Notes: generated by a model not told the origin, from the letters alone. Shown: positions 1 through 17,582, numbered from the whole stretch's first letter. The stretch is DNA of 63,955 nt, filler included, from Octopus bimaculoides (GCF_001194135.2; 7 parts of 7 records of this genome joined end to end with filler, not necessarily neighbours in it), one strand, 5' to 3'. A program made the numbers and translations.

Positions 1-731
1 TATTATCGCTTGTCGTCGTAGTTTTCGTAAAAGTCTCCCACCTGTCATCACCTCTTTCTTCTTCCTCTTATTTTAATCTATTTCTTCAGCAGTATCTACT
101 CTTCTTCTTCTTCTTCTACACCCCCCCCCACGTATTTATAATTTATCCCTTGTTTCATGTCATTTCTTTTCAATCTTTTTATACAGCACCACGTATATCA
201 TCTGTAAATGTTTTACCGAAACAATTCTTCTTCTTCTTCTACTACTTCTTCTTCTTCTTCTTCTTCTTCTACTACTACTATTACTACTACTAATTCTTCT
301 TCTACTTCTTCCTCCTCATCTTCTTTTTCTTCTTCTTCGTCTATTTTTACACACATTCACAATCTTCAACGCCAACATCTTTGTCAATATCACATACATC
401 ANNNNNNNNNNTTCAACACCAACATCTTTGTCAATATCACATACATCATCACAACAAAACCTGTGAATCCTCATCATTTTCACAATGCAAAAAAATTATT
501 ATAAACATCACTCCATCATCAGCATCATAACATCAGCATCAACACTCCCACAGTAATTTCCTCTCCTCTGCCACATCACCATACTCATTACTGCTCCCAT
601 CCTACCCAACATTATCTACAACACCATCATGAATTTTATCATGATGGTAATCTACATTTCGTATCTTCCATCATCCCATTCTTTTGACAAATATGTTCAA
701 TAAATGTTCTTAACTCAATGTTATGTTCCAG

Positions 732-803
732 GAAATTGCACCGAAATGAAATTAAGAAAATCCAAGCAGGAACCTTCCGAAATCTTTCCAGTTTAATAAC
801 TCT
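732..803 (+). CDS. 72-nt LRR exon, type A (A1): KLHRNEIKKIQAGTFRNLSSLITL
   Basis: ttatgttccAG acceptor, exactly 72 nt, GTGAGT donor at 804; open frame fits the typical 24-aa LRR pattern xLxxNxIxxIxxxxFxxLxxLxxL; phase 2 at both ends. Confidence 0.9.
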
Positions 804-1110
804 GTGAGTTGAATCAACCTACTTCTATCGTATTTCTTTGACGATATCTCACTAAATTCGTAATGTCTTTCTATAGAGGCAATCTATAATTTGTGAACGT
901 GATTGTGGGCCCAAATCTGAGATGTGAGATACATGGGAGCAACCAATGCCATTATCCTCATCATCATCATCATCATCAACCTTATCATCATCATCATCAT
1001 CTAACCCATCATCATCATCAGCGTCTGCGTTCCTAAATGTTTTGGTATTACATTTTATATTTCATTACGAACATGTATACAATTTTTCACGGCTCCCTAT
1101 TTTGTTACAG

Positions 1111-1182
1111 AGATTTGTTTGATAATAATATCAGTGAATTAGGAGTTGGATCTTTTCAAAATCTTCCCAATTTAACGACTCT
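1111..1182 (+). CDS. 72-nt LRR exon, type B (B1): DLFDNNISELGVGSFQNLPNLTTL
   Basis: tttgttacAG acceptor, 72 nt, GTAAGT donor at 1183; open LRR frame; phase 2/2. Confidence 0.9.
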
Positions 1183-2056
1183 GTAAGTTGCATAATTTTT
1201 TTGATTGCCTTTTATTCATAATATAATTCTAAACATTTTATGTCTTTCCATGCTTTCTTTTCTGTCATCCACTCTACTTGACGCACTATATACACTCAGT
1301 CGCTTTCCCCAGGAATATTCAATTCTTTGTAAATGTCTGAGAAGGTGTGTGTGTGTGTATGTGTGTGTGCGTGTGCGTGTGTGTGTGAATATTAGTCTCT
1401 TGCTTTATATATGAGTTTCTGATAATTACTGCATATGATTTTGTGCAAGATTGTGCATATGTCAGTGTGTGTCATGCAGGATGAGTGAACGTACATGAGT
1501 GTATCGACTTCATTTGTACCTCCTTTTGTATATTATTTATTATGTTTACATCTCGAGCAACGCTGATTACCATTCATGGCTCTCCGTTCTAATTATAAAT
1601 TGTGAATGATATTATTTGTTTAGATTTTGCTACACTTTTCAACTTTACTCATATATAAATATCTCTAACCTTCCAACTTTTAATCAATCACTTTCTTTAT
1701 GTCTCTGAAAATATTTCCAGCTATATAAATTCTTCATCATCACCTTCATCAAAATCATCATTGCCATATCTTTCCTCATCAACACCATCACAATAAACAC
1801 CACCACCATCGCCATCATCACCACCATTATCATCACCATCATCATGAACATGAACACTAAAACCATTTTCTTCGACCACCGAATTATCATCAGATCCATC
1901 ACCACCATCACAAACACCACAACCACCACCATCAACATCATTATCATCTACGCCATCATCATCATCATCAACTGCTTTCCTAAATTTTAGGCGTTATATT
2001 TTATATTTCATTACGAACCTGTATACATTTTTTCACGGTTCACTTATTTGTTACAG

Positions 2057-2128
2057 AAATTTGTTTGATAATGATATCAGTGAATTAGAAGTTGGATCTT
2101 TTCAAAATCTTCCCAGATTAAAGACTCT
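2057..2128 (+). CDS. 72-nt LRR exon, type B (B2): NLFDNDISELEVGSFQNLPRLKTL
   Basis: atttgttacAG acceptor, 72 nt, GTAAGT donor at 2129; open LRR frame. Confidence 0.9.
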
Positions 2129-2164
2129 GTAAGTTGCATTAGTTTTTTGATTCTCTTTTATTGA

Positions 2165-2190
2165 CCCTAACCCTAACCCTAACCCTAACC
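2165..2190. repeat. Short interstitial telomere-type repeat (CCCTAA)4
   Basis: ccctaaccctaaccctaaccctaacc read directly. Confidence 0.85.
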
Positions 2191-2261
2191 TCAATCTCCT
2201 TGACGCGTTATATACACTCAGTCGCTTTCCACAGGAATATCGCATTCTTTGTGAACGTCTG

Positions 2262-2314
<53 letters not shown>

Positions 2315-2773
2315 TATCAGTGTCTGGGTTTATGTATGAGTTTTGATAACATAGGCATATGATTTTGTGTATGTGCCTATGTCAACCTATGTCTTTCAGT
2401 ATGAGTGAATGTACACGAGTGTATCGACTTGGTTTGTACCTCTTTTGTATATTATTTATTATGTTTACTTTTCGATCAAAGCTGATTACCATTCATGGCT
2501 CCGCGTTATAATTATATATTGTGCATTACATTATTCATGTTTAAAGTTTGCTACACTTTCCAAATCTGAGTAATATATTTTACGCTTTTCTGTTTCTTCA
2601 TCATTTACTCCTAATGACGTAATATTCATCACTGCTCTCATTCCACCCAACATTATCTACAACATCCTCATGAACTTCATCATGATGGTGGTCTACATTC
2701 TATCTTTTCATCATCGAATTCTTTAGTCACAAATTTGTTCAATAAATGTTCTTTACTCAATGTTATGTTCCAG

Positions 2774-2845
2774 GAAATTGTACGATAATAAAATTAAGAA
2801 CATCAAAGCAGGAACTTTCCGAAATCTTTCCAGTTTAACAAGTCT
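2774..2845 (+). CDS. 72-nt LRR exon, type A (A2): KLYDNKIKNIKAGTFRNLSSLTSL
   Basis: ttatgttccAG acceptor, 72 nt, GTAAGT donor at 2846; open LRR frame. Confidence 0.9.
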
Positions 2846-3018
2846 GTAAGTTGAATCAACTTTCGTTTACAATATTTCTTTGACGATATCTTTCTGAGTC
2901 TGTAATGTCCTACAGATGCAATTTATAGTTTGTGAACGTATGTGAATGTGAGTGTGGACCCATTTCTGAGATGTGAGATATATGGGAACATGATAACTGA
3001 GGGGAAACATTTAGTGCA

Positions 3019-3060
<42 letters not shown>

Positions 3061-4547
3061 TACAGATCTGTATAGATGAATTGCTGTGTGTGTATGTATG
3101 TAGATCGAATCTAAATNNNNNNNNNNTAACATCCTTGAATAACGCTAGTAGATGTTATTCCTCGTCTTCTTCTACTTCTTCTTCGTCTTCTCTTTCCCAT
3201 TCTTCTTTTTCCACTTCTCCTCCTTCCTTATCTTTTTGTCTTCTTTTCTTCTCTTCTCCTTTTATCTTCTCTTCTTTTACCAGTCGCTTTTTTAAAAATC
3301 TTTTTGTACTTCACTCCCTATTCGCTCCTATTCCGTTTTTCTGTTCTTCTGCATGACCCCCCTGCGTCTTACTCTTTTGTATGCTCACCTCATTCCTTCT
3401 CTTCTTAATTTGCTACTACAAATTTTCTCTTCTTCTTCACTCCCCCCCTTTTTCTTCTTCTCCTTCTCCCTGTTGTTCTTGTTCGCCCAATAACTATTCT
3501 CCTTCATCATCTACTTCATTTCCTTCTTGTTCGTCTTCTTATTCCTCGTTTTCATCATTTACTTCTTCATATTCTTGTTCTGTCCCCTTTTCTTTTCTCC
3601 TACTTCTTTTTCTTCATTCCCTGCTATTCTTGTACCTCTCCTACATACCCTTTGTATTTGCTTTCCCGCTCTTTCATCATATGTTTGCTTCGTAAATATT
3701 TGTCTTGCGTAAACCATTTTCATCATCGNNNNNNNNNNNNNNNNNNNNNNNNNNNNNNNNNNNNNNNNNNNNNNNNNNNNNNNNNNNNNNNNNNNNNNNN
3801 NNNNNNNNNNNNNNNNNNNNNNNNNNNNNNNNNNNNNNNNNNNNNNNNNNNNNNNNNNNNNNNNNNNNNNNNNNNNNNNNNNNNNNNNNNNNNNNNNNNN
3901 NNNNNNNNNNNNNNNNNNNNNNNNNNNNNNNNNNNNNNNNNNNNNNNNNNNNNNNNNNNNNNNNNNNNNNNNNNNNNNNNNNNNNNNNNNNNNNNNNNNN
4001 NNNNNNNNNNNNNNNNNNNNNNNNNNNNNNNNNNNNNNNNNNNNNNNNNNNNNNNNNNNNNNNNNNNNNNNNNNNNNNNNNNNNNNNNNNNNNNNNNNNN
4101 NNNNNNNNNNNNNNNNNNNNNNNNNNNNNNNNNNNNNNNNNNNNNNNNNNNNNNNNNNNNNNNNNNNNNNNNNNNNNNNNNNNNNNNNNNNNNNNNNNNN
4201 NNNNNNNNNNNNNNNNNNNNNNNNNNNNNNNNNNNNNNNNNNNNNNNNNNNNNNNNNNNNNNNNNNNNNNNNNNNNNNNNNNNNNNNNNNNNNNNNNNNN
4301 NNNNNNNNNNNNNNNNNNNNNNNNNNNNNNNNNNNNNNNNNNNNNNNNNNNNNNNNNNNNNNNNNNNNNNNNNNNNNNNNNNNNNNNNNNNNNNNNNNNN
4401 NNNNNNNNNNNNNNNNNNNNNNNNNNNNNNNNNNNNNNNNNNNNNNNNNNNNNNNNNNNNNNNNNNNNNNNNNNNNNNNNNNNNNNNNNNNNNNNNNNNN
4501 NNNNNNNNNNNNNNNNNNNNNNNNNNNNNNNNNNNNNNNNNNNNNNN

Positions 4548-5520
4548 CGGAAAGTGCATTTTCGATTTTAACAGTTATTTTTTTTCAAAGCTATAAAGGA
4601 AGTGAAAAACGAGCCTATTCGGCATATTTTGGTTTATGAGTTCAATAAAGGCAACAACGCAAATGAAAGTGCAATGAATAATTATGTACTGTATGGGTTT
4701 CGGTCAATACTGCAATTCCGAGTCGGACACTACAGTCTGGAAGACGAGCCTCGTCATGGAAGATCTTTAGAGCTCGACGAGGACGTTCAGCAAAACTGGC
4801 AGAAAAAATATCATCGTATTTATTGGCGAACTAGCAGAGAAGTTTGCATTTGGTCTTTCAACCATTCATTGATATCTGCGTACCATCAGAAAAGTCGGTG
4901 AATTCGGTCAATGGGTTCCTCACAAATATTTCGCGTCTAAGACAACGAATGTTTGTTTTTCTTTGCTATCACGTGTGACGAAAGAAACATTTTACACCAA
5001 ATAGTAACTGGTGAGGAGAAATATATTCTCTGCAACAATATCAAGCGCCAATAACGATGGAATAGGAATAGGAAAAACACCGACATCCCAGGCTAAAGAT
5101 CTTCATCCACATAAGGTGTTACTATTTGTTTGGTGGGACATGAGTTGTCTATTCCACTTTGAAAATTTAAACCCAAACCGATCAATAACAAAGGATATCT
5201 ACTGGGAACAGCTTGAACAGCTCATGTCAGCTCCAAAAGAAAAACAACCATCTTTGTTATTAATTCTAAAGGTGTTCTTCGATCGGTAAAATGCTCGGCG
5301 ACAAAAAGCGAGGATGACATTCACAAGGCTAAACTATTCTGAATGGGAAACGAAGCTTCACACACCATATCTGCCGGACTTTTCCAGATGTGATTTTCAG
5401 TTATTCTGCAGTCTTTAAAATCATTTGGATGGAAAAAATATGACATTTGTAGACAATTTCACAACAGTACTGGAGGAGTATTTTTCGTTACGAACAACTG
5501 AAATATGGAAGAGGGGGCTT
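4548..5520 (+). mobile_element. Decayed mariner (Mos1/SETMAR-like) transposon
   Basis: Frameshifted transposase: IRHILVYEFNKGNNA..SLEDEPRHGR (HTH), VTGEEKYI (cf. VTGDEKW), KVLLFVWWD (cf. KVMLCVWWD), HTPYLPDF (cf. HPPYSPDL); 3' end truncated into a (CAT)n tract. Confidence 0.9.
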
Positions 5521-5809
5521 TGTAAGTCTAGCATCATTTATATCATCATCGTCATCATCATCACCACCACCATCTGCATCATCATCTACATGAACACTAA
5601 CACCATCATCTTCGTCCACCCAATTATCCTCATATCCATCACCAAAATCACAAACATCACAACCAACACCACGACAACCACCACCATCATAATTATCATC
5701 ATCTACACCATCATCATCAGCGTGTACTTTCCTAAATTTTTAGGCATCATCTTTTATATTTCATTACGAACCTGTGTACATTTTTTCACGGCTCACGTTT
5801 TTGTTGCAG

Positions 5810-5881
5810 GGTGTTGTACAATAATGCTATCAATGAATTAGAAGTTGGATCTTTTCAAGATCTTCCCAGTTTAACGACTCT
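5810..5881 (+). CDS. 72-nt LRR exon, type B (B3): VLYNNAINELEVGSFQDLPSLTTL
   Basis: tttttgttgcAG acceptor, 72 nt, GTAAGT donor at 5882; open LRR frame. Confidence 0.9.
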
Positions 5882-6549
5882 GTAAGTTGCATTAATTTTT
5901 GATTCCCTTTTATTCATAATATAATTCTAAACATTTCATGTTTTTCCATGCTTTCTTTTTTCTCTCACTCTCCTTAACGCAATAAATACACTCAGTCGCT
6001 TTCCACAGGAATATGATATTCTTTGTGAATGTCTGAGGTGTGTGTATGGGTGTGTTGTGTGTGTTTGTGTCTGTGTGAATATCAGTGTCTGGATTTATGT
6101 ATGAGTTTCTGATAATTAATGTATATGTTTTTGTGCATGTATCTGCATATGTAAGCCTGTGTCTTTCAATATGAGTGAATGTACACGAGGGTATAGACTT
6201 AATTTGTATATCTTTTTGTATATTATATATTATGTTTACATCTCGTTCAACGCTGATTACCATTCATGGTTCTATGTTGTAATTGTTTATTGTGAATTAC
6301 ATTATACATGCTTAAATGTTGCAACACCTACCAAGTCAGAGTAATTTATTTTACACTTTTCTATGTCTTCATCATCCTAAACACAAAAGATCCGTCTGCA
6401 TAAATAACTTCTTTTCTATTGATCGTTTCCTTTCCTTCTCCTTCTCCTCTTTGTCTTCTACCACTACATCTTCCTCTTTCTTCCTCCACTACGACAGAAA
6501 GAAAGACTGCGACAACTGCAACAGCAGCAAGGAATACTACTACTACTAC

Positions 6550-7250
6550 TTGTAATAATAATAATAATAATAATTTCATTTATTGGCCACAAGTGCCGAC
6601 GTATAGGGGACAACACCGTAGATGGGAACACTGGGGATTTTACGCAAAACAACGAGTAAACAGTTCCGAAAATAATAACAAAACACATGAAACAAGAAAC
6701 ATATTGCAATGAGATTTCCCCAATGGCTGTGATGACTATCCAGGTTTGGCTCAGGTAAACCCTAATCCTGAACAACCCGATGCTTCGATGGTGCACAGAA
6801 AGGGCGCACCTCTCCTCAAATTCACCAGCGTACAGACGCATCATTAGAGTAGGGCTATTTTGTCTACATTCACACATATTTGAGCAACTACATGGAGGGG
6901 AATCACTTCTGTCTCGTTGCTGATGGTTTTTACCGATGCTGGTGTTTGTTGTTTGTTGTCCTCGTCCTGGCGTTGATAGCAGTGGGAAGCCTTCCAACTC
7001 TTGCACTTTCTAGCAGTTGAGGTTAGAATGCTCGCAGATGAGTAGTTTCTCCACAAACAGAACAACGCGGCCTTTCCCCACTCAGTCATTGTGCAATACT
7101 ATCCCGTTTTGGAGAGGGAGGTTGTCCGGGATTGAAGTTTTCGGGACATGATCTGGAGAAGTATTTCTAGTTCCACTCCGGGCCAGTCCTCCCTGAATCT
7201 TTTGTCCCCTATATTTGGACGGTATCTGACCCTTCCACGATTATGTGTAA
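6550..7250 (-). mobile_element. Probable LINE 3' fragment with (ATT)n tail inserted in an LRR intron
   Basis: Complex, more GC-rich block interrupting the duplicated flanks; on the minus strand it ends ..aataaatgaaatt(att)n. Family not identified. Confidence 0.4.
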
Positions 7251-8424
7251 TGATCGAAATTAACAACATCACCCCATCATCAGCATCACAATATCAATAA
7301 CACTCCAACNNNNNNNNNNNNNNNNNNNNNNNNNNNNNNNNNNNNNNNNNNNNNNNNNNNNNNNNNNNNNNNNNNNNNNNNNNNNNNNNNNNNNNNNNNN
7401 NNNNNNNNNNNNNNNNNNNNNNNNNNNNNNNNNNNNNNNNNNNNNNNNNNNNNNNNNNNNNNNNNNNNNNNNNNNNNNNNNNNNNNNNNNNNNNNNNNNN
7501 NNNNNNNNNNNNNNNNNNNNNNNNNNNNNNNNNNNNNNNNNNNNNNNNNNNNNNNNNNNNNNNNNNNNNNNNNNNNNNNNNNNNNNNNNNNNNNNNNNNN
7601 NNNNNNNNNNNNNNNNNNNNNNNNNNNNNNNNNNNNNNNNNNNNNNNNNNNNNNNNNNNNNNNNNNNNNNNNNNNNNNNNNNNNNNNNNNNNNNNNNNNN
7701 NNNNNNNNNNNNNNNNNNNNNNNNNNNNNNNNNNNNNNNNNNNNNNNNNNNNNNNNNNNNNNNNNNNNNNNNNNNNNNNNNNNNNNNNNNNNNNNNNNNN
7801 NNNNNNNNNNNNNNNNNNNNNNNNNNNNNNNNNNNNNNNNNNNNNNNNNNNNNNNNNNNNNNNNNNNNNNNNNNNNNTGAATCAACCCACGTTTATAGTA
7901 TTTCTTTGACGATATCTTTCTAAACCTGTAATGTCTTTCTGTAGACGCAATTTATAGCGTGTCACCTTCATCTCATTTTACATCTGTTTTTGCTTCTTTA
8001 CCTGTCTGTAGTTCTATTTCTTCCTCTTCTCCACCTTGTTCTACTTCTTCTATTTGTTCTTCCCCTCCCCCTGCACCACCGTCTACTTCTTCATCGTGTT
8101 GTACTTTGTGTTCGTCACCTACTGTTCAGCTTCTCCTTCTCCTATTTTTTTCTCCTTCTCGTTGTTATGGTGGCTGTTTTTCTTCCCTCTTCTCGTCTTC
8201 TTCAGCTTCTCTTCCTTCTTTTCCTCCTTCTTCTCCTCCCCTTCATCTATTTCTTCGTCTTCTTTTTCTACTTATTCTTCCTTCTCCACCACTACTACTT
8301 CTTTCCTTGTTTACTTATTCAAATTTTTTCTACATTTCTCTTTTCTTTTCGTATCGTCTTGTACTGCGTCTGCATCTTTTTCATATTATATTTCTACATC
8401 TCCTCCTCCTCCTCCTTCTGTTTC

Positions 8425-8706
8425 CAAAGGTAAATTATTCAGACCCCAAAGAATTCCCCTCAACACATGGCTGTGATGTTCCCTCACTACTTCTGCTCGT
8501 GATCAGAGATGCACATATCGTCAGCCACCAAGGGACGTGCTCAACTGGTTAAGATCAAACAACTGACAAGCAAATATGTGGTATTAAGCAGAATATTTGC
8601 TGTAGTCCATCTTTTTATACCAAGACAAAACAATGTACATGATAACACTTCCAATCAGTTAAGATCAGAAGCCATGAGAGCCACTGCCTGGAACTGAATC
8701 CGGGCA

Positions 8707-8756
<50 letters not shown>

Positions 8757-8759
8757 TAT
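8425..8759 (+). mobile_element. Retroposon 3' end with (ATT)n tail
   Basis: Complex block interrupting the CT-rich flank and ending in an (ATT)n run; resembles a common octopus interspersed repeat. Family uncertain. Confidence 0.5.
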
Positions 8760-9614
8760 NNNNNNNNNNNNNNNNNNNNNNNNNNNNNNNNNNNNNNNNN
8801 NNNNNNNNNNNNNNNNNNNNNNNNNNNNNNNNNNNNNNNNNNNNNNNNNNNNNNNNNNNNNNNNNNNNNNNNNNNNNNNNNNNNNNNNNNNNNNNNNNNN
8901 NNNNNNNNNNNNNNNNNNNNNNNNNNNNNNNNNNNNNNNNNNNNNNNNNNNNNNNNNNNNNNNNNNNNNNNNNNNNNNNNNNNNNNNNNNNNNNNNNNNN
9001 NNNNNNNNNNNNNNNNNNNNNNNNNNNNNNNNNNNNNNNNNNNNNNNNNNNNNNNNNNNNNNNNNNNNNNNNNNNNNNNNNNNNNNNNNNNNNNNNNNNN
9101 NNNNNNNNNNNNNNNNNNNNNNNNNNNNNNNNNNNNNNNNNNNNNNNNNNNNNNNNNNNNNNNNNNNNNNNNNNNNNNNNNNNNNNNNNNNNNNNNNNNN
9201 NNNNNNNNNNNNNNNNNNNNNNNNNNNNNNNNNNNNNNNNNNNNNNNNNNNNNNNNNNNNNNNNNNNNNNNNNNNNNNNNNNNNNNNNNNNNNNNNNNNN
9301 NNNNNNNNNNNNNNNNNNNNNNNNNNNNNNNNNNNNNNNNNNNNNNNNNNNNNNNNNNNNNNNNNNNNNNNNNNNNNNNNNNNNNNNNNNNNNNNNNNNN
9401 NNNNNNNNNNNNNNNNNNNNNNNNNNNNNNNNNNNNNNNNNNNNNNNNNNNNNNNNNNNNNNNNNNNNNNNNNNNNNNNNNNNNNNNNNNNNNNNNNNNN
9501 NNNNNNNNNNNNNNNNNNNNNNNNNNNNNNNNNNNNNNNNNNNNNNNNNNNNNNNNNNNNNNNNNNNNNNNNNNNNNNNNNNNNNNNNNNNNNNNNNNNN
9601 NNNNNNNNNNNNNN

Positions 9615-9673
9615 AATAAAATTAAGAACGTCAAAGCAGGAACTTTCCGAAATCTTTCCAGTTTAACAACTCT
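9615..9673 (+). CDS. Type A LRR exon (A4), 5' end lost in gap: ..NKIKNVKAGTFRNLSSLTTL
   Basis: 59 nt visible after the N-gap, near-identical to A2, GTAAGT donor at 9674; a 72-nt exon would start at 9602 inside the gap. Confidence 0.85.
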
Positions 9674-9862
9674 GTAAGTTGAATCAACCCACGTTTATCG
9701 TATTTCTTTGACGATATCTTTCTACCATCATCATGATGATCATCTGCCCCGTCATCATCACCACCATCAGCGTCTACTTTCCAAACTTTTTAGGTATCAT
9801 ATCTTATATTTCATTACGAACCTGTATACAATTTTTCACTGTTCATTTTTTTTTTGTTACAG

Positions 9863-9934
9863 AGAGTTGTACAATAATGATATCAATGAATTGGAAGTTG
9901 GATCTTTTCAAAATCTTCCCAGTTTAACGGCTCT
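9863..9934 (+). CDS. 72-nt LRR exon, type B (B4): ELYNNDINELEVGSFQNLPSLTAL
   Basis: tttttttgttacAG acceptor, 72 nt, GTAAGT donor at 9935; the peptide is visible at the end of ORF 9708..9938. Confidence 0.9.
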
Positions 9935-10318
9935 GTAAGTTGCATTAGTTTCTTTATTCCATTTTGTTAACAATATAATTCTGGACATTCAATGGCTTCC
10001 CTTTCGAATCCTCATCTTTTTCACAATGATCAAAATTAACTTCATCCCATCATCAGCATCATAACATCATCATCACCACTCCCCAATAATATCTTNNNNN
10101 NNNNNCATCATAACATCATCATCACCACTCCCGCAATAATATCTTCTCCTCTGCCTCATCATCATCATTCTCAGCACAGCTCCCACCCTACTCAACATTA
10201 TCTACAACATCATCATGAAGTTCATATTGATGGTAATCTACTTTTCATATCATCCCTCATCTAATTCTTTATTCATAAATTTGTTCCATAATTTGTTCGA
10301 CTCAATGTTATGTTCCAG

Positions 10319-10390
10319 GAATTTGTACAATAACAAAATTGCGAAAATCAAAGCAGAAACCTTCGGAAATCTTTCCAGTTTAACAAATCT
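10319..10390 (+). CDS. 72-nt LRR exon, type A (A5): NLYNNKIAKIKAETFGNLSSLTNL
   Basis: ttatgttccAG acceptor, 72 nt, GTAAGT donor at 10391; open LRR frame. Confidence 0.9.
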
Positions 10391-11489
10391 GTAAGTTCAA
10401 TCAACCCACGTTTATAGTATTTCTTTGACGATATCTTTCTAAACCTGTAATGTCTTTCTATAGACGCAATTTTTAGCGTGTCACCTTCATCTCATTTTAA
10501 ATCTGTTTTTGCTTCTTTACCTGTCTATAGTTCTATTTTTTCCTCTTCTCCACCTTGTTCTACTTCTTCTATTTGTTCTTCCCCTCCTCCTCCACCACCG
10601 TCTACTTCTTCATCGTTTTTGCATCGTGTTGTACTTCGGATTCGTCACCTACTGTTCAGCTTCTCCTTCTCCTTCTACTTTTTTCTCATTCTCGTTGTTA
10701 TGGTGGTTGTACTTCTTCTCCCTTCTCTTCTTCTTCAGCTTCTCTTCTTTCTTTTCCTCCTTCTTCTCCTCCTCTTCATCTATTTCTTCTTTTTCTACTT
10801 ATTCTTCCTTCTCCACCACTACTACTTCTTTCCTNNNNNNNNNNNNNNNNNNNNNNNNNNNNNNNNNNNNNNNNNNNNNNNNNNNNNNNNNNNNNNNNNN
10901 NNNNNNNNNNNNNNNNNNNNNNNNNNNNNNNNNNTGTACCTCTCCTACATACCCTTTGTATTTGCTTTCCCGCTCTTTCATCATGTGTTTGCTTCGTAAA
11001 TATTTGTCTTGCGTAAACCATTTTCATCATCGTCTTCTTCATTCAGCACAGCCAACGTCTGCGAGACCAAGCGCTTCTTCTTCGTCATCAAACTTTCATC
11101 CGGATCGTTATGATAATTATTATCATCACCACAATTATCATCATTAATATATTTATTACTGGCAACACCGTTATATCGTTATTAACTGTAATTACATCTT
11201 CCACCTCCTCCTCTACCTTGTCATCATATCAACTATCGTCACCACCACCACCATCATCATCAACATCACCATCATTACCAGTAATATCAGCAGCAGCAGC
11301 AGCAGCAGCAGCAGCGGCGGCATCACCATCATCATCGTCACCGTTTTCTTCCTTATCATAATCGTCATTTTATTTCCTTCTCCACACACATCTACTGATT
11401 TCGCTATAATATTTAATATTTATTTCGAAACCCACTTCTTTTGGATCTTCTCATAAATAATTCAGCTTTTTCAATTCATTGAACTAAAA

Positions 11490-11616
11490 GTCAGAGTGGG
11501 ATGAGATAAATTACCTGCATCACCTTGTTAAAAAAAACAGGTAATAATTTTACACTGCACTTATTCTTAGTGCAAGTTTCGGAAAGTGCATTTTCGATTT
11601 TAACAGTTATTTTTTT
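11490..11616 (+). mobile_element. 5' part of a second copy of the 4548 mariner
   Basis: cggaaagtgcattttcgattttaacagttattttttt is identical to 4548-4584; cut by gap; left boundary approximate. Confidence 0.75.
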
Positions 11617-17218: not shown

Positions 17219-17582
17219 GCACTCCGTCGCTTACAAAGTCGAGGGTTCCAGTCGATCCGATCAACGGAACAGCCTGCTCGTGAAATTAACGTGCAAGTGG
17301 CTGAGCACTCCACAGACACGTGTACCCTTAACGTAGTTCTCGGGGATATTCAGCGTGACACAGTGTGACAAGGCTGGCCCTTTGAAATACAGGTACAACA
17401 GAAACAGGAAGAAAGAGTGAGAGAAAATTGTGGTGGAAGAGTACAGCAGGGTTCACCGGAGCCTTGTGGAGCTTTAGGTGTTTTCGCTCAATAAACACTC
17501 ACAACGCCCGGTCTGGGACTCGAAACCGCGATCCTCTGACCGCGAGTCCGCTGCCCTAACCACTGGGCCATTGCGCCTCCAC
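17219..17582 (-). mobile_element. tRNA-derived SINE
   Basis: Minus-strand head gtggaggcgcaatggcccagtggttagggcagcggactcgcggtcagaggatcgcggtttcgagtcccag has A/B-box-like motifs; near-identical copy at 26021-26378. Confidence 0.85.

What the first reader, a model, noticed from the sequence alone, without database searches (positions are those of the whole stretch)
732..10390. Array of interchangeable 72-nt, one-LRR-per-exon cassettes: candidate modular, diversified LRR receptor
Seen: seven complete exons and one partial exon. Each complete exon is exactly 72 nt, AG..GT bounded, phase 2/2 and stop-free, and encodes one 24-aa typical LRR. Visible order is A,B,B,A,B,A,B,A. Every exon ends in CT and starts with A or G, so any junction makes Leu (CTA/CTG) and any subset of exons splices in frame. 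Established: single-LRR 72-nt exons occur in LGR/RXFP/GRL101-type GPCRs; 24-aa LRR cassettes are the diversity unit of lamprey VLRs; exon-level LRR shuffling is described for brown-algal ROCO genes. Inference: this is the ectodomain of a rapidly expanding LRR protein whose repeat number and order vary by unequal crossing-over and possibly by alternative splicing, a candidate recognition or immune-type system in a cephalopod. No N- or C-terminal exons are visible, so the family is unassigned.
Basis: partly seen in the sequence, partly recalled or inferred. Interest (0 to 1): 0.85.

Follow-up and report, generated by a model that had tools for sequence, protein, structure and literature searches.

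The report
Octopus single-LRR exon array, adhesion-GPCR family
The window holds a real run of at least nine 72-base exons, each coding one leucine-rich repeat, which belongs to an octopus gene family whose fuller members carry such repeats in front of an adhesion-type G-protein-coupled receptor; it is a locally duplicated but conventionally spliced gene segment, with no sign of an immune-type diversification system.

Summary
There are seven complete 72-nt exons and one gap-truncated exon, all AG..GT bounded, phase 2/2, ending in CT and starting with A or G. Each codes one 24-aa typical LRR (Pfam LRR_8 E=1.7e-47; 7 observed against 0.005 expected in shuffles). Gap 7310-7877 almost certainly hides a ninth, A-type exon, so the visible order is incomplete.

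The family can now be assigned. The closest specific relatives are Octopus sinensis, O. bimaculoides and O. vulgaris genes with signal peptide, LRRNT and many 72-nt LRR exons. The fuller models continue into an LRRCT-like region, a Cys-rich module, a weak HRM match, GAIN/GPS and 7tm_2. These are ADGRA-like adhesion GPCRs, probably the octopus-specific expansion described by Ritschard et al. 2019. They are not LGR/GRL101, TLR or VLR.

The array grew by local tandem duplication of exon-plus-intron units. The copies differ only at surface positions, mostly those around the β-strand (predicted concave face), and every framework residue and splice site is kept. NCBI predicts isoforms that skip a single exon in an O. 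sinensis paralogue, so in-frame cassette skipping is plausible. Nothing here supports immune function or combinatorial diversity.

Exon-per-LRR modularity is already known (Slit, LGR, NLR). Verdict: new member of a known kind, moderate interest.

The parts
732..803 (+). LRR exon A1 (72 nt, phase 2/2), codes (L)KLHRNEIKKIQAGTFRNLSSLIT; donor GTGAGT
1111..1182 (+). LRR exon B1, codes DLFDNNISELGVGSFQNLPNLTT
2057..2128 (+). LRR exon B2, codes NLFDNDISELEVGSFQNLPRLKT; 92% identical to B1 (tandem copy of a ~950-bp B unit)
2774..2845 (+). LRR exon A2, codes KLYDNKIKNIKAGTFRNLSSLTS
5810..5881 (+). LRR exon B3, codes VLYNNAINELEVGSFQDLPSLTT
7310..7877 (+). Assembly gap that by its flanks hides one more A-type exon (inferred, not read)
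   Evidence: the left flank matches the sequence upstream of A exons, and the right flank from 7878 matches the intron that directly follows A exons (82-91%)
9615..9673 (+). Partial LRR exon A4 (last 59 of 72 nt; 5' end lost in gap 8760-9614), codes ..NKIKNVKAGTFRNLSSLTT; 57/59 identical to A2
9863..9934 (+). LRR exon B4, codes ELYNNDINELEVGSFQNLPSLTA
10319..10390 (+). LRR exon A5, codes NLYNNKIAKIKAETFGNLSSLTN
984..1642 (+). B duplication unit (upstream intron + exon B + downstream intron). Further copies lie at 1931-2604 and 5686-6375, and in part at 9756-9989, at 82-88% identity
523..883 (+). A duplication unit (upstream intron + exon A + downstream intron). Further copies lie at 2622-2987 and 10106-10470 (about 82.5%), and in part at 9615-9724 and 7878-7957

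Best explanation
The window is an internal stretch of the LRR ectodomain of one gene of an Octopus-lineage family. The family layout is signal peptide, LRRNT, many typical 24-aa LRRs (one per 72-nt phase-2 exon), an LRRCT-like region, a Cys-rich module, an HRM-like region, GAIN/GPS and a 7TM of the secretin/adhesion class. This is an ADGRA-like adhesion GPCR.

Shown here:
- The exons are conventional spliceosomal exons.
- Each adds one turn to the LRR solenoid.
- Every exon is 72 nt, phase 2/2, and splits the Leu codon at LRR position 4 as CT|A/G. Duplicating, deleting or skipping any exon therefore changes only the repeat number.
- The array grew by local tandem duplication of exon-plus-intron units (an A unit, a B unit and A-B pairs), presumably by unequal crossing-over between the homologous introns.
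- After duplication the framework residues and splice sites were kept, while surface positions (mostly those around the β-strand, the predicted concave ligand face) changed freely.

Inferred from paralogues, not shown for this window: that the gene starts with the family's signal/LRRNT exon, that it ends in GAIN/GPS/7TM, and that some exons are skipped in some transcripts.

Likely role, by analogy and from published expression of the family: cell-surface ligand or adhesion recognition in peripheral nervous tissue, suckers or skin. An immune role is not indicated.
For: Exon anatomy and LRR identity.

Family link by protein. The only specific hit among 1.84 billion representatives is O. sinensis XP_036369864.1 (P0172, 57% identity), which has signal peptide, LRRNT, about 11 LRRs, an LRRCT-like region and a post-LRR module. 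The closest short models are O. sinensis and O. bimaculoides 'LRRC4-like' proteins with the same N-terminus.

Family link by DNA. A exons plus about 100 bp of intron on each side align at 74-83% to LRR exons of loci L001, L003 and L004. All 43 LRR exons found in 5 loci share the design: 72 nt, a GT[AG][AT]GT donor (38 of 43 GTAAGT), ending CT/TT/AT and starting A/G(/C).

Link to the adhesion GPCR:
- In L002 the LRR gene is followed on the same strand by a GPS+7tm_2 gene.
- The C-terminus of P0172 matches the first exon of that gene.
- Exons for the post-LRR, HRM and GAIN parts are colinear in L002, L004 and the gap-free L005.
- O. vulgaris CAI9743462.1 joins the family N-terminus, LRRs, GAIN_ADGRA3 and 7tm_2 in one model.
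- An O. sinensis 1088-aa model has LRR_8+GPS+7tm_2.
- PMC6408891 reports an octopus-specific adhesion-GPCR expansion, with LRRs in 5 of 22 members.

Local duplication: (nearest exon is inside the window at 86-92%, against 68-76% elsewhere).

Selection pattern. pN/pS is 1.0-2.0 between same-type exons. There are zero amino-acid differences at L1, L6, N9, I11, I/L14, F19 and L22 and a constant Leu at the junction codon; differences cluster at positions 2, 3, 5, 7, 8, 10, 12, 15 and 24. Placing the same number of substitutions at random keeps all seven exons intact with probability about 4e-7, the product of the per-exon rates.

Exon skipping: isoforms XP_029657302.2, XP_036355967.1 and XP_036355968.1.
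Against: - The window contains no N-terminal, LRRCT, GAIN or 7TM exon. Its attachment to a 7TM is therefore only by analogy.
- Several family models are annotated as short LRR-only proteins.
- No annotated protein containing these exact exons was recovered, so expression is unproven.
- pN/pS of about 1 or more rests on 23 codons per exon and could reflect relaxed constraint on surface positions rather than positive selection.
- The random-placement probability treats exons as independent and so overstates significance.
- The assembly is gappy. Parts of the distal introns (3631-3728 against 10935-11032; 4548-4584 against 11580-11616) are 99-100% identical, so part of the higher-order copy number could be an assembly artefact.
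- Identification with 'group 3' of PMC6408891 is by shared description, not by matching gene identifiers.
Confidence: 0.7

Rival explanations
1. LRR-only secreted protein. The array belongs to a family member that has lost, or never had, the GAIN/7TM part, or is mainly expressed as short secreted signal-LRRNT-LRRn products. These would end where a transcript reads into an intron, since every donor gives CTG-TAA or CTG-TGA.
For: NCBI models of 86-251 aa consist only of signal peptide, LRRNT and LRRs, and end '...TL*' through donor read-through. In L003 and L004 no 7TM exon was found within the fetched range.
Against: The short models stop at contig ends or assembly gaps, and further LRR exons lie beyond them (L001 exon 36018-36089). 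Where sequence continues, the post-LRR, GAIN and 7TM exons follow colinearly. Read-through stops are an automatic by-product of phase 2 plus a GTAAGT donor.
Confidence: 0.2
2. This is a diversified recognition or immune-type receptor, in which repeat number and order vary between individuals and many exon combinations are produced by alternative splicing, making a functional analogue of VLR or Dscam-type diversity.
For: Frame- and codon-neutral cassettes. Recent local duplications. Variation concentrated on the predicted ligand face with pN/pS of 1 or more. Predicted single-exon-skipping isoforms in a paralogue.
Against: - There is no expression, population or somatic data.
- The exons have full splice signals, unlike VLR cassettes.
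- The same exon design occurs in non-immune genes such as Slit and LGR (PMC6642158).
- Published expression of the octopus adhesion-GPCR expansion is in axial nerve cord, suckers, skin and gills, and is interpreted as neural or adhesive (PMC6408891).
- Only two exon types, with 7-9 copies, are present here.
Confidence: 0.1
3. Non-functional or partly artefactual array. The exons would be a decaying duplicated gene fragment, or their number would be inflated by mis-assembly of a repetitive, gap-rich region.
For: - Eight N runs within the 11.6-kb piece.
- Two 10-N gaps are unmerged overlaps.
- A 100-N join at 10835-10934 is followed by sequence 99-100% identical to 3631-3728 and 4548-4584.
- Exon divergence (13.9%) is close to that of the upstream intron (15.3%).
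- No annotated product was recovered.
Against: Copies are 8-19% diverged, far above what allelic or assembly duplicates would show. All seven exons keep an open frame, both splice sites, the CT end and all framework residues (about 4e-7 under random placement). Differences avoid the framework positions entirely.
Confidence: 0.08
4. Ectodomain of an LGR/RXFP/GRL101-type (rhodopsin-class) LRR GPCR, a Slit, or a Toll-like receptor.
For: By sequence, the best solved structures are LGR5 and LGR4 (1e-59 to 1e-41). TLR13, TLR3 and RXFP1 appear lower in the sequence search and Slit2 D3 in the Foldseek search. One-LRR 72-nt exons are known in LGR and Slit genes. One relative is named 'toll-like receptor 5' and others 'slit homolog'.
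Against: These matches are generic to typical 24-aa LRRs. The specific octopus relatives contain GAIN_ADGRA3, GPS and 7tm_2, and no 7tm_1, LDLa, TIR, EGF or LamG. The protein named TLR5 has no TIR.
Confidence: 0.02

Closest known systems
Octopus-specific adhesion-GPCR expansion with LRR N-termini (Ritschard et al. 2019, PMC6408891, 'group 3'). Gene models include O. vulgaris CAI9743462.1 'ADGRG6-like', O. sinensis XP_036369864.1 and O. bimaculoides XP_052833813.1
   Same: The same 72-nt phase-2 LRR exons, with homologous flanking intron sequence. The same LRR consensus (N9, F19 and L1 invariant in 43 of 43 exons). Octopus only, in clustered tandem genes.
   Different: The window shows only the LRR middle part. 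Its introns are much shorter (189-950 bp where complete) than in the fetched paralogues (mostly 0.3-9 kb). Its repeats are much more alike (82-92%), so this is a younger intragenic expansion. The exon-cassette design and skipping isoforms were not discussed in that paper.
Vertebrate ADGRA2/ADGRA3 (GPR124/GPR125): LRR-LRRCT-Ig-HRM-GAIN-7TM adhesion GPCRs
   Same: An N-terminal LRR block, followed by HRM, GAIN/GPS and 7tm_2. The Pfam GAIN_ADGRA3 model hits the octopus relatives weakly.
   Different: The octopus family has many more LRRs (up to 17 or more exons per gene, against about 4). It has a Cys-rich module and an unassigned module instead of the Ig domain. Orthology was not tested.
Slit, LGR/glycoprotein-hormone-receptor and NLR genes: 'exonic modularity' of LRRs (Hoss et al. 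2019, PMC6642158; Little et al. 2002, cited there)
   Same: One LRR per short frame-preserving exon (a 69-75 bp peak in human genes), which allows in-frame exon skipping.
   Different: A different protein family. In this window the units are recent tandem copies together with their introns.
Lamprey/hagfish VLR cassettes
   Same: 24-aa LRR modules serve as the unit of variation, and variability falls on the concave face.
   Different: VLR cassettes are non-exonic donor segments copied somatically into an incomplete germline gene. Here each unit is an ordinary exon with AG/GTAAGT signals, and there is no evidence of somatic assembly.

Membership tests
Octopus LRR adhesion-GPCR (ADGRA-like) family | Typical 24-aa LRRs, each on a 72-nt phase-2 exon split at the Leu of LRR position 4, with a GT[AG][AT]GT donor (mostly GTAAGT) | tested here: met
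   Window exons compared with 36 exons of L001-L004
Octopus LRR adhesion-GPCR (ADGRA-like) family | Sequence homology to family members beyond generic LRR similarity | tested here: met
   57% identity to XP_036369864.1, the only short specific hit among the 150 best of 1.84 billion representatives. Exon plus flanking intron DNA is 74-83% identical to L001, L003 and L004
Octopus LRR adhesion-GPCR (ADGRA-like) family | N-terminal exon with the family signal peptide (MFQQLKLTF...) and LRRNT | tested here: not met
   tblastn finds none in the window. The array runs to the first readable exon, so that exon would lie upstream of the piece. This is absence from the window, not from the gene
Octopus LRR adhesion-GPCR (ADGRA-like) family | Downstream LRRCT-like, Cys-rich, HRM, GAIN/GPS and 7tm_2 exons | not testable with these tools
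   None in the window, and the genomic neighbourhood of the window could not be fetched. They are present in paralogues
LGR/RXFP/GRL101-type rhodopsin-class LRR GPCR | 7tm_1 domain (plus LDLa in RXFP/GRL101) attached to the LRR block | tested here: not met
   Not visible in the window. The specific relatives carry GPS/7tm_2 instead, with no 7tm_1 or LDLa. PDB similarity to LGR4/5 is generic
Variable lymphocyte receptor (VLR) system | LRR cassettes without splice signals, used as donors for somatic gene-conversion-like assembly | tested here: not met
   All units have canonical acceptor and GTAAGT/GTGAGT donor sites and symmetric phase
Toll-like receptor | Single-pass TM and cytoplasmic TIR domain after the LRR block | tested here: not met
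   The relative named 'toll-like receptor 5' (XP_052833813.1) has no TIR in Pfam and continues into the post-LRR and HRM-like modules
Slit | Four LRR domains, each capped by LRRNT/LRRCT, followed by EGF and LamG | tested here: not met
   Relatives named 'slit homolog 1-like' or 'SLITRK4-like' contain one LRR block and then the family's Cys-rich and post-LRR modules, with no EGF or LamG

The most novel reading that the evidence does not exclude
Octopus ADGRA-like receptors would use their long runs of frame-neutral single-LRR exons as a combinatorial splicing code. Many exon subsets per gene, across dozens of clustered genes, would give a diversified set of cell-surface recognition ectodomains in the arm nervous system and suckers. 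This would be an LRR-based counterpart of Dscam1 or clustered-protocadherin diversity, fed by ongoing exon duplication and by selection on the concave face.
Probability: 0.1. Interest if true: 0.8.

Novelty: new member of a known kind. Interest (0 to 1): 0.35.

Why it matters
It assigns an unannotated, gap-broken stretch to a lineage-specific receptor family. It also shows that current annotations of that family are fragmentary and misnamed ('LRRC4-like', 'toll-like receptor 5', 'slit homolog', 'ALS'), because the genes span tens to hundreds of kilobases of tiny exons.

The window is a clean example of how symmetric one-repeat exons let an LRR ectodomain grow by tandem exon duplication while the ligand face diverges.

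If transcript data showed extensive cassette choice, the family would become a candidate diversity system in the octopus peripheral nervous system. Without such data it is an ordinary, though young, multi-exon LRR domain.

Tried and rejected
- The search for homologous proteins returned only hits shorter than about 1.75 times the query length (largest 272, 274 and 807 aa for queries of 168, 157 and 461 aa). Long receptor models could therefore not be retrieved directly.
- The exhaustive representative search was swamped by giant LRR proteins. Only P0172 was informative.
- No protein containing the window's exact exons was found, so the window's genomic neighbourhood could not be fetched.
- Look-ups of P0001 and P0258 found nothing on record. 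P0172 and P0292 span 229 kb and 119 kb, so no DNA was returned.
- Pfam finds nothing for the family's Cys-rich module or its LRRCT-like segment, and only a chance-level hit for the ~100-aa post-LRR module. The resemblance of 'CCTGNLC..N' to Ly6/uPAR is from memory only and is not claimed.
- The Slit 72-bp exon paper (Little et al. 2002) is not in the library and is cited only through PMC6642158.
- PDB sequence and fold searches gave only generic LRR ectodomains.
- Searches for further degenerate LRR copies, or for minus-strand exons, in the window were negative.
- The collections reachable by DNA pattern search are viral, metagenomic or prokaryotic, so they were not used.

Full report

Yes. 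A mechanical scan for AG-72nt-GT windows recovers seven complete exons on the + strand: 732-803, 1111-1182, 2057-2128, 2774-2845, 5810-5881, 9863-9934 and 10319-10390. A 59-nt 3' part of an eighth lies at 9615-9673, directly after gap 8760-9614.

- All are open only in the frame that leaves one base at the 5' end and two at the 3' end (phase 2/2).
- All end in CT and begin with G or A, so every possible junction codon is CTG or CTA, both Leu.
- Acceptors are pyrimidine tract + CAG. Donors are GTAAGT, once GTGAGT.
- Two sequence types alternate irregularly. A is ..NKIK.IKAGTFRNLSSLT. and B is ..N.I.ELEVGSFQNLPSLT.
- The joined 168 aa score 1.7e-47 on Pfam LRR_8.
- AlphaFold2 gives a confident solenoid from the single sequence (pLDDT 84.7) with a β-strand every 24 residues.
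- Shuffled sequence gives 0.005 such exons against 7 observed, and none lie on the minus strand.
- No further degenerate copies exist in the readable sequence.

**2. The gaps**

- Every gap lies in an intron except 8760-9614, which removes the first 13 nt and the acceptor of exon A4.
- Gap 7310-7877 is bracketed by the sequence that normally precedes an A exon and by the intron that normally follows one. A ninth, A-type exon is hidden there. The true order is A,B,B,A,B,[A],?,A,B,A, not the visible A,B,B,A,B,A,B,A.
- Gap 10096-10105, and 402-411 outside the finding, are flanked by 37-40 nt overlapping copies with one difference. These are unmerged contig ends, and the sequence is continuous there.
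- Gap 3729-4547 corresponds to 547 bp without an exon in the paralogous copy 11033-11579.
- The 100-N gap at 10835-10934, outside the finding, looks like a scaffold join. The sequence after it is 99-100% identical to 3631-3728 and 4548-4584, while the proximal parts of the same two introns are only about 82% alike. What follows exon A5 is therefore uncertain: a recent segmental duplication, gene conversion or a redundant scaffold end.

**3. How the array arose**

Self-comparison shows duplicated units that include the introns.

- A B unit occurs at 984-1642, 1931-2604 and 5686-6375, and in part at 9756-9989.
- An A unit occurs at 523-883, 2622-2987 and 10106-10470, and in part at 9615-9724 and 7878-7957.
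- The units are 82-92% identical.
- B1 and B2 are a tandem copy of the B unit alone, about 950 bp apart.
- Each exon's nearest relative is inside the window (86-92%), against 68-76% for the best exon in four other loci of the family.

This is what unequal crossing-over between homologous introns would leave.

**4. Constraint**

- Between same-type exons pN/pS is 1.0-2.0.
- Exon divergence (13.9%) is close to that of the upstream intron (15.3%).
- The changes are far from random. There are no amino-acid differences at L1, L6, N9, I11, I/L14, F19 or L22, and the junction codon is always Leu. Differences cluster at LRR positions 2, 3, 5, 7, 8, 10, 12, 15 and 24.
- Positions 3-7 form the β-strand in the model. 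In LRR proteins generally, the x positions of LxxLxLxxN form the concave ligand face (established knowledge).
- Placing the same number of substitutions at random leaves all seven exons intact (open frame, AG/GT, CT end, framework) with a probability of about 4e-7, the product of the per-exon rates. This treats the exons as independent and so overstates significance.

The exons are therefore maintained, with a free or diversifying surface. With 23 codons per exon, positive selection cannot be separated from relaxed constraint.

**5. Which family?**

The closest short proteins are O. sinensis 'LRRC4-like' models (XP_036369515.1, XP_029657302.2) and O. bimaculoides XP_014782534.1 and XP_014782915.2. 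All begin with a conserved signal peptide (MFQQLKLTF..) and LRRNT, followed by LRRs.

Their loci L001, L002 and L003, and the locus of XP_052833813.1 (L004), show the same design throughout. In total 43 exons of 72 nt were found in five loci, with a GT[AG][AT]GT donor (38 of 43 GTAAGT), ending CT/TT/AT, starting A/G(/C), and with N9, F19 and L1 invariant. The window's A exons align to these loci together with about 100 bp of intron on each side, at 74-83%. That is homology well beyond generic LRR resemblance.

In the exhaustive search, the only specific hit among the 150 best of 1.84 billion representatives is O. sinensis XP_036369864.1, at 57% identity. After about 11 LRRs it continues into an LRRCT-like segment and a further module.

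That further module matches three things:
- the first exon of the GPS+7tm_2 gene that lies 4.6 kb downstream of the LRR gene in L002, on the same strand;
- O. vulgaris 'ADGRG6-like' CAI.. models that carry GAIN_ADGRA3 and GPS;
- colinear exons in L002, L004 and the gap-free O. vulgaris locus L005, where a 7tm_2 gene follows.

O. vulgaris CAI9743462.1 joins the family N-terminus, LRRs, GAIN_ADGRA3 and 7tm_2 in one model. An O. sinensis 1088-aa model has LRR_8+GPS+7tm_2.

The family is therefore an ADGRA-like LRR adhesion GPCR. The short 'LRR-only' models are mostly fragments cut by contig ends, gaps or intron read-through.

Ritschard et al. 2019 (PMC6408891) already described an octopus-specific adhesion-GPCR expansion:
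- LRRs in 5 of 22 members;
- tandem co-localisation;
- expression mainly in axial nerve cord, suckers and skin in O. bimaculoides, and in gills in C. minor;
- branch-level signals of accelerated evolution.

The present family fits that description. Identity with their 'group 3' was not checked gene by gene.

**6. Splicing**

The symmetric phase makes any exon subset frame-neutral.

In the O. sinensis paralogue on L001, NCBI predicts three isoforms. X1 has four LRR exons. X2 lacks exon 17471-17542 and X3 lacks exon 26535-26606, each exactly one 72-nt exon. This is model-level evidence, in another gene and species, that cassette skipping occurs. I have no transcript data for the window.

Every donor gives an in-frame stop on read-through (CTG TAA or CTG TGA). 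This explains why the short models end in '..TL*'. It is an automatic consequence of phase 2 plus GTAAGT, though it would also let intron-retaining transcripts encode secreted LRR-only products.

**7. Comparison with what is known**

- One-LRR exons of 69-75 bp, frame-preserving and seen as a precondition for alternative splicing, are described for several human families, including Slit (Hoss et al. 2019, PMC6642158).
- The closest domain architecture is vertebrate ADGRA2/3.
- The similarity to LGR4/5, Nogo receptor, chondroadherin, Slit2 D3 and TLR3/13 in PDB searches is generic.
- VLR-type cassettes lack splice signals and are assembled somatically, so that defining feature is not met here.
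- TIR, 7tm_1, LDLa, EGF and LamG are absent from the specific relatives.

**8. Verdict**

Alternative splicing is plausible but untested here. The immune/VLR reading and the LGR/GRL101 lead are not supported. The 'unassigned' family can be assigned to an already reported octopus-specific adhesion-GPCR expansion.

What is new is modest: the cassette-exon anatomy of that family, a young intragenic expansion with divergence on the ligand face, and the extent of mis-annotation. This is a new member of a known kind, interest about 0.35. The residual exciting reading, a combinatorial LRR-exon code in the octopus peripheral nervous system, is not excluded (about 0.1) and could be tested directly with long-read cDNA.

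Noticed in passing
window 4548-5520 (+): Dead mariner-type transposon inside the A2-to-B3 intron. The frames are broken by stops and shifts. Pfam Transposase_1 scores 2.7e-13 and HTH_48 1.6e-4. Its first 37 nt recur, 100% identical, at 11580-11616.
   Followed up: partly
window 10835-10934 and 10935-11616, against 3631-3728 and 4548-4584: A 100-N gap, probably a scaffold join, is followed by sequence 99-100% identical to the distal A2 intron. The proximal parts of the same two introns are only about 82% alike. This is a mosaic from a recent duplication or conversion, or a redundant scaffold end.
   Followed up: partly
window 402-411 and 10096-10105: The 10-N gaps are flanked by 37-40 nt overlapping copies with one difference. 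They are unmerged contig ends rather than missing sequence.
   Followed up: yes
window 2166-2190: A short interstitial telomere-like run, (CCCTAA)4, inside the B2-to-A2 intron.
   Followed up: no
window 8421-8635; L003 14037-14250: An interspersed repeat about 215 bp long, 87% identical to a copy in an intron of an O. bimaculoides paralogue, followed by an (ATT)n microsatellite. The introns are otherwise full of CTT/CAT-type low-complexity runs.
   Followed up: no
all donors in the window; L001 34970-34976: Reading through any donor gives CTG-TAA or CTG-TGA, an immediate in-frame stop. The NCBI models XP_029657302.2, XP_036355967.1 and XP_036355968.1 end this way, although a further LRR exon lies at L001 36018-36089.
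   Followed up: partly
family proteins P0254, P0253, P0255, P0256 (not in the window): After the LRRCT-like segment the family has two modules. One is about 90 aa, Cys-rich, ends in CC.GNLC and has no Pfam match. The other is about 100 aa, unassigned and duplicated in P0254. A weak HRM match follows (4.5e-4).
   Followed up: partly
L004 (O. bimaculoides CM046629.1:10400675-10483064): XP_052833813.1 is named 'toll-like receptor 5' but has no TIR. Other family members are named ALS, LRRC4-like, LRRC15-like, SLITRK4-like and slit homolog. These are annotation misnomers by LRR similarity. L004 carries 20 LRR exons of this design in 82 kb, spread over three adjacent gene models.
   Followed up: partly
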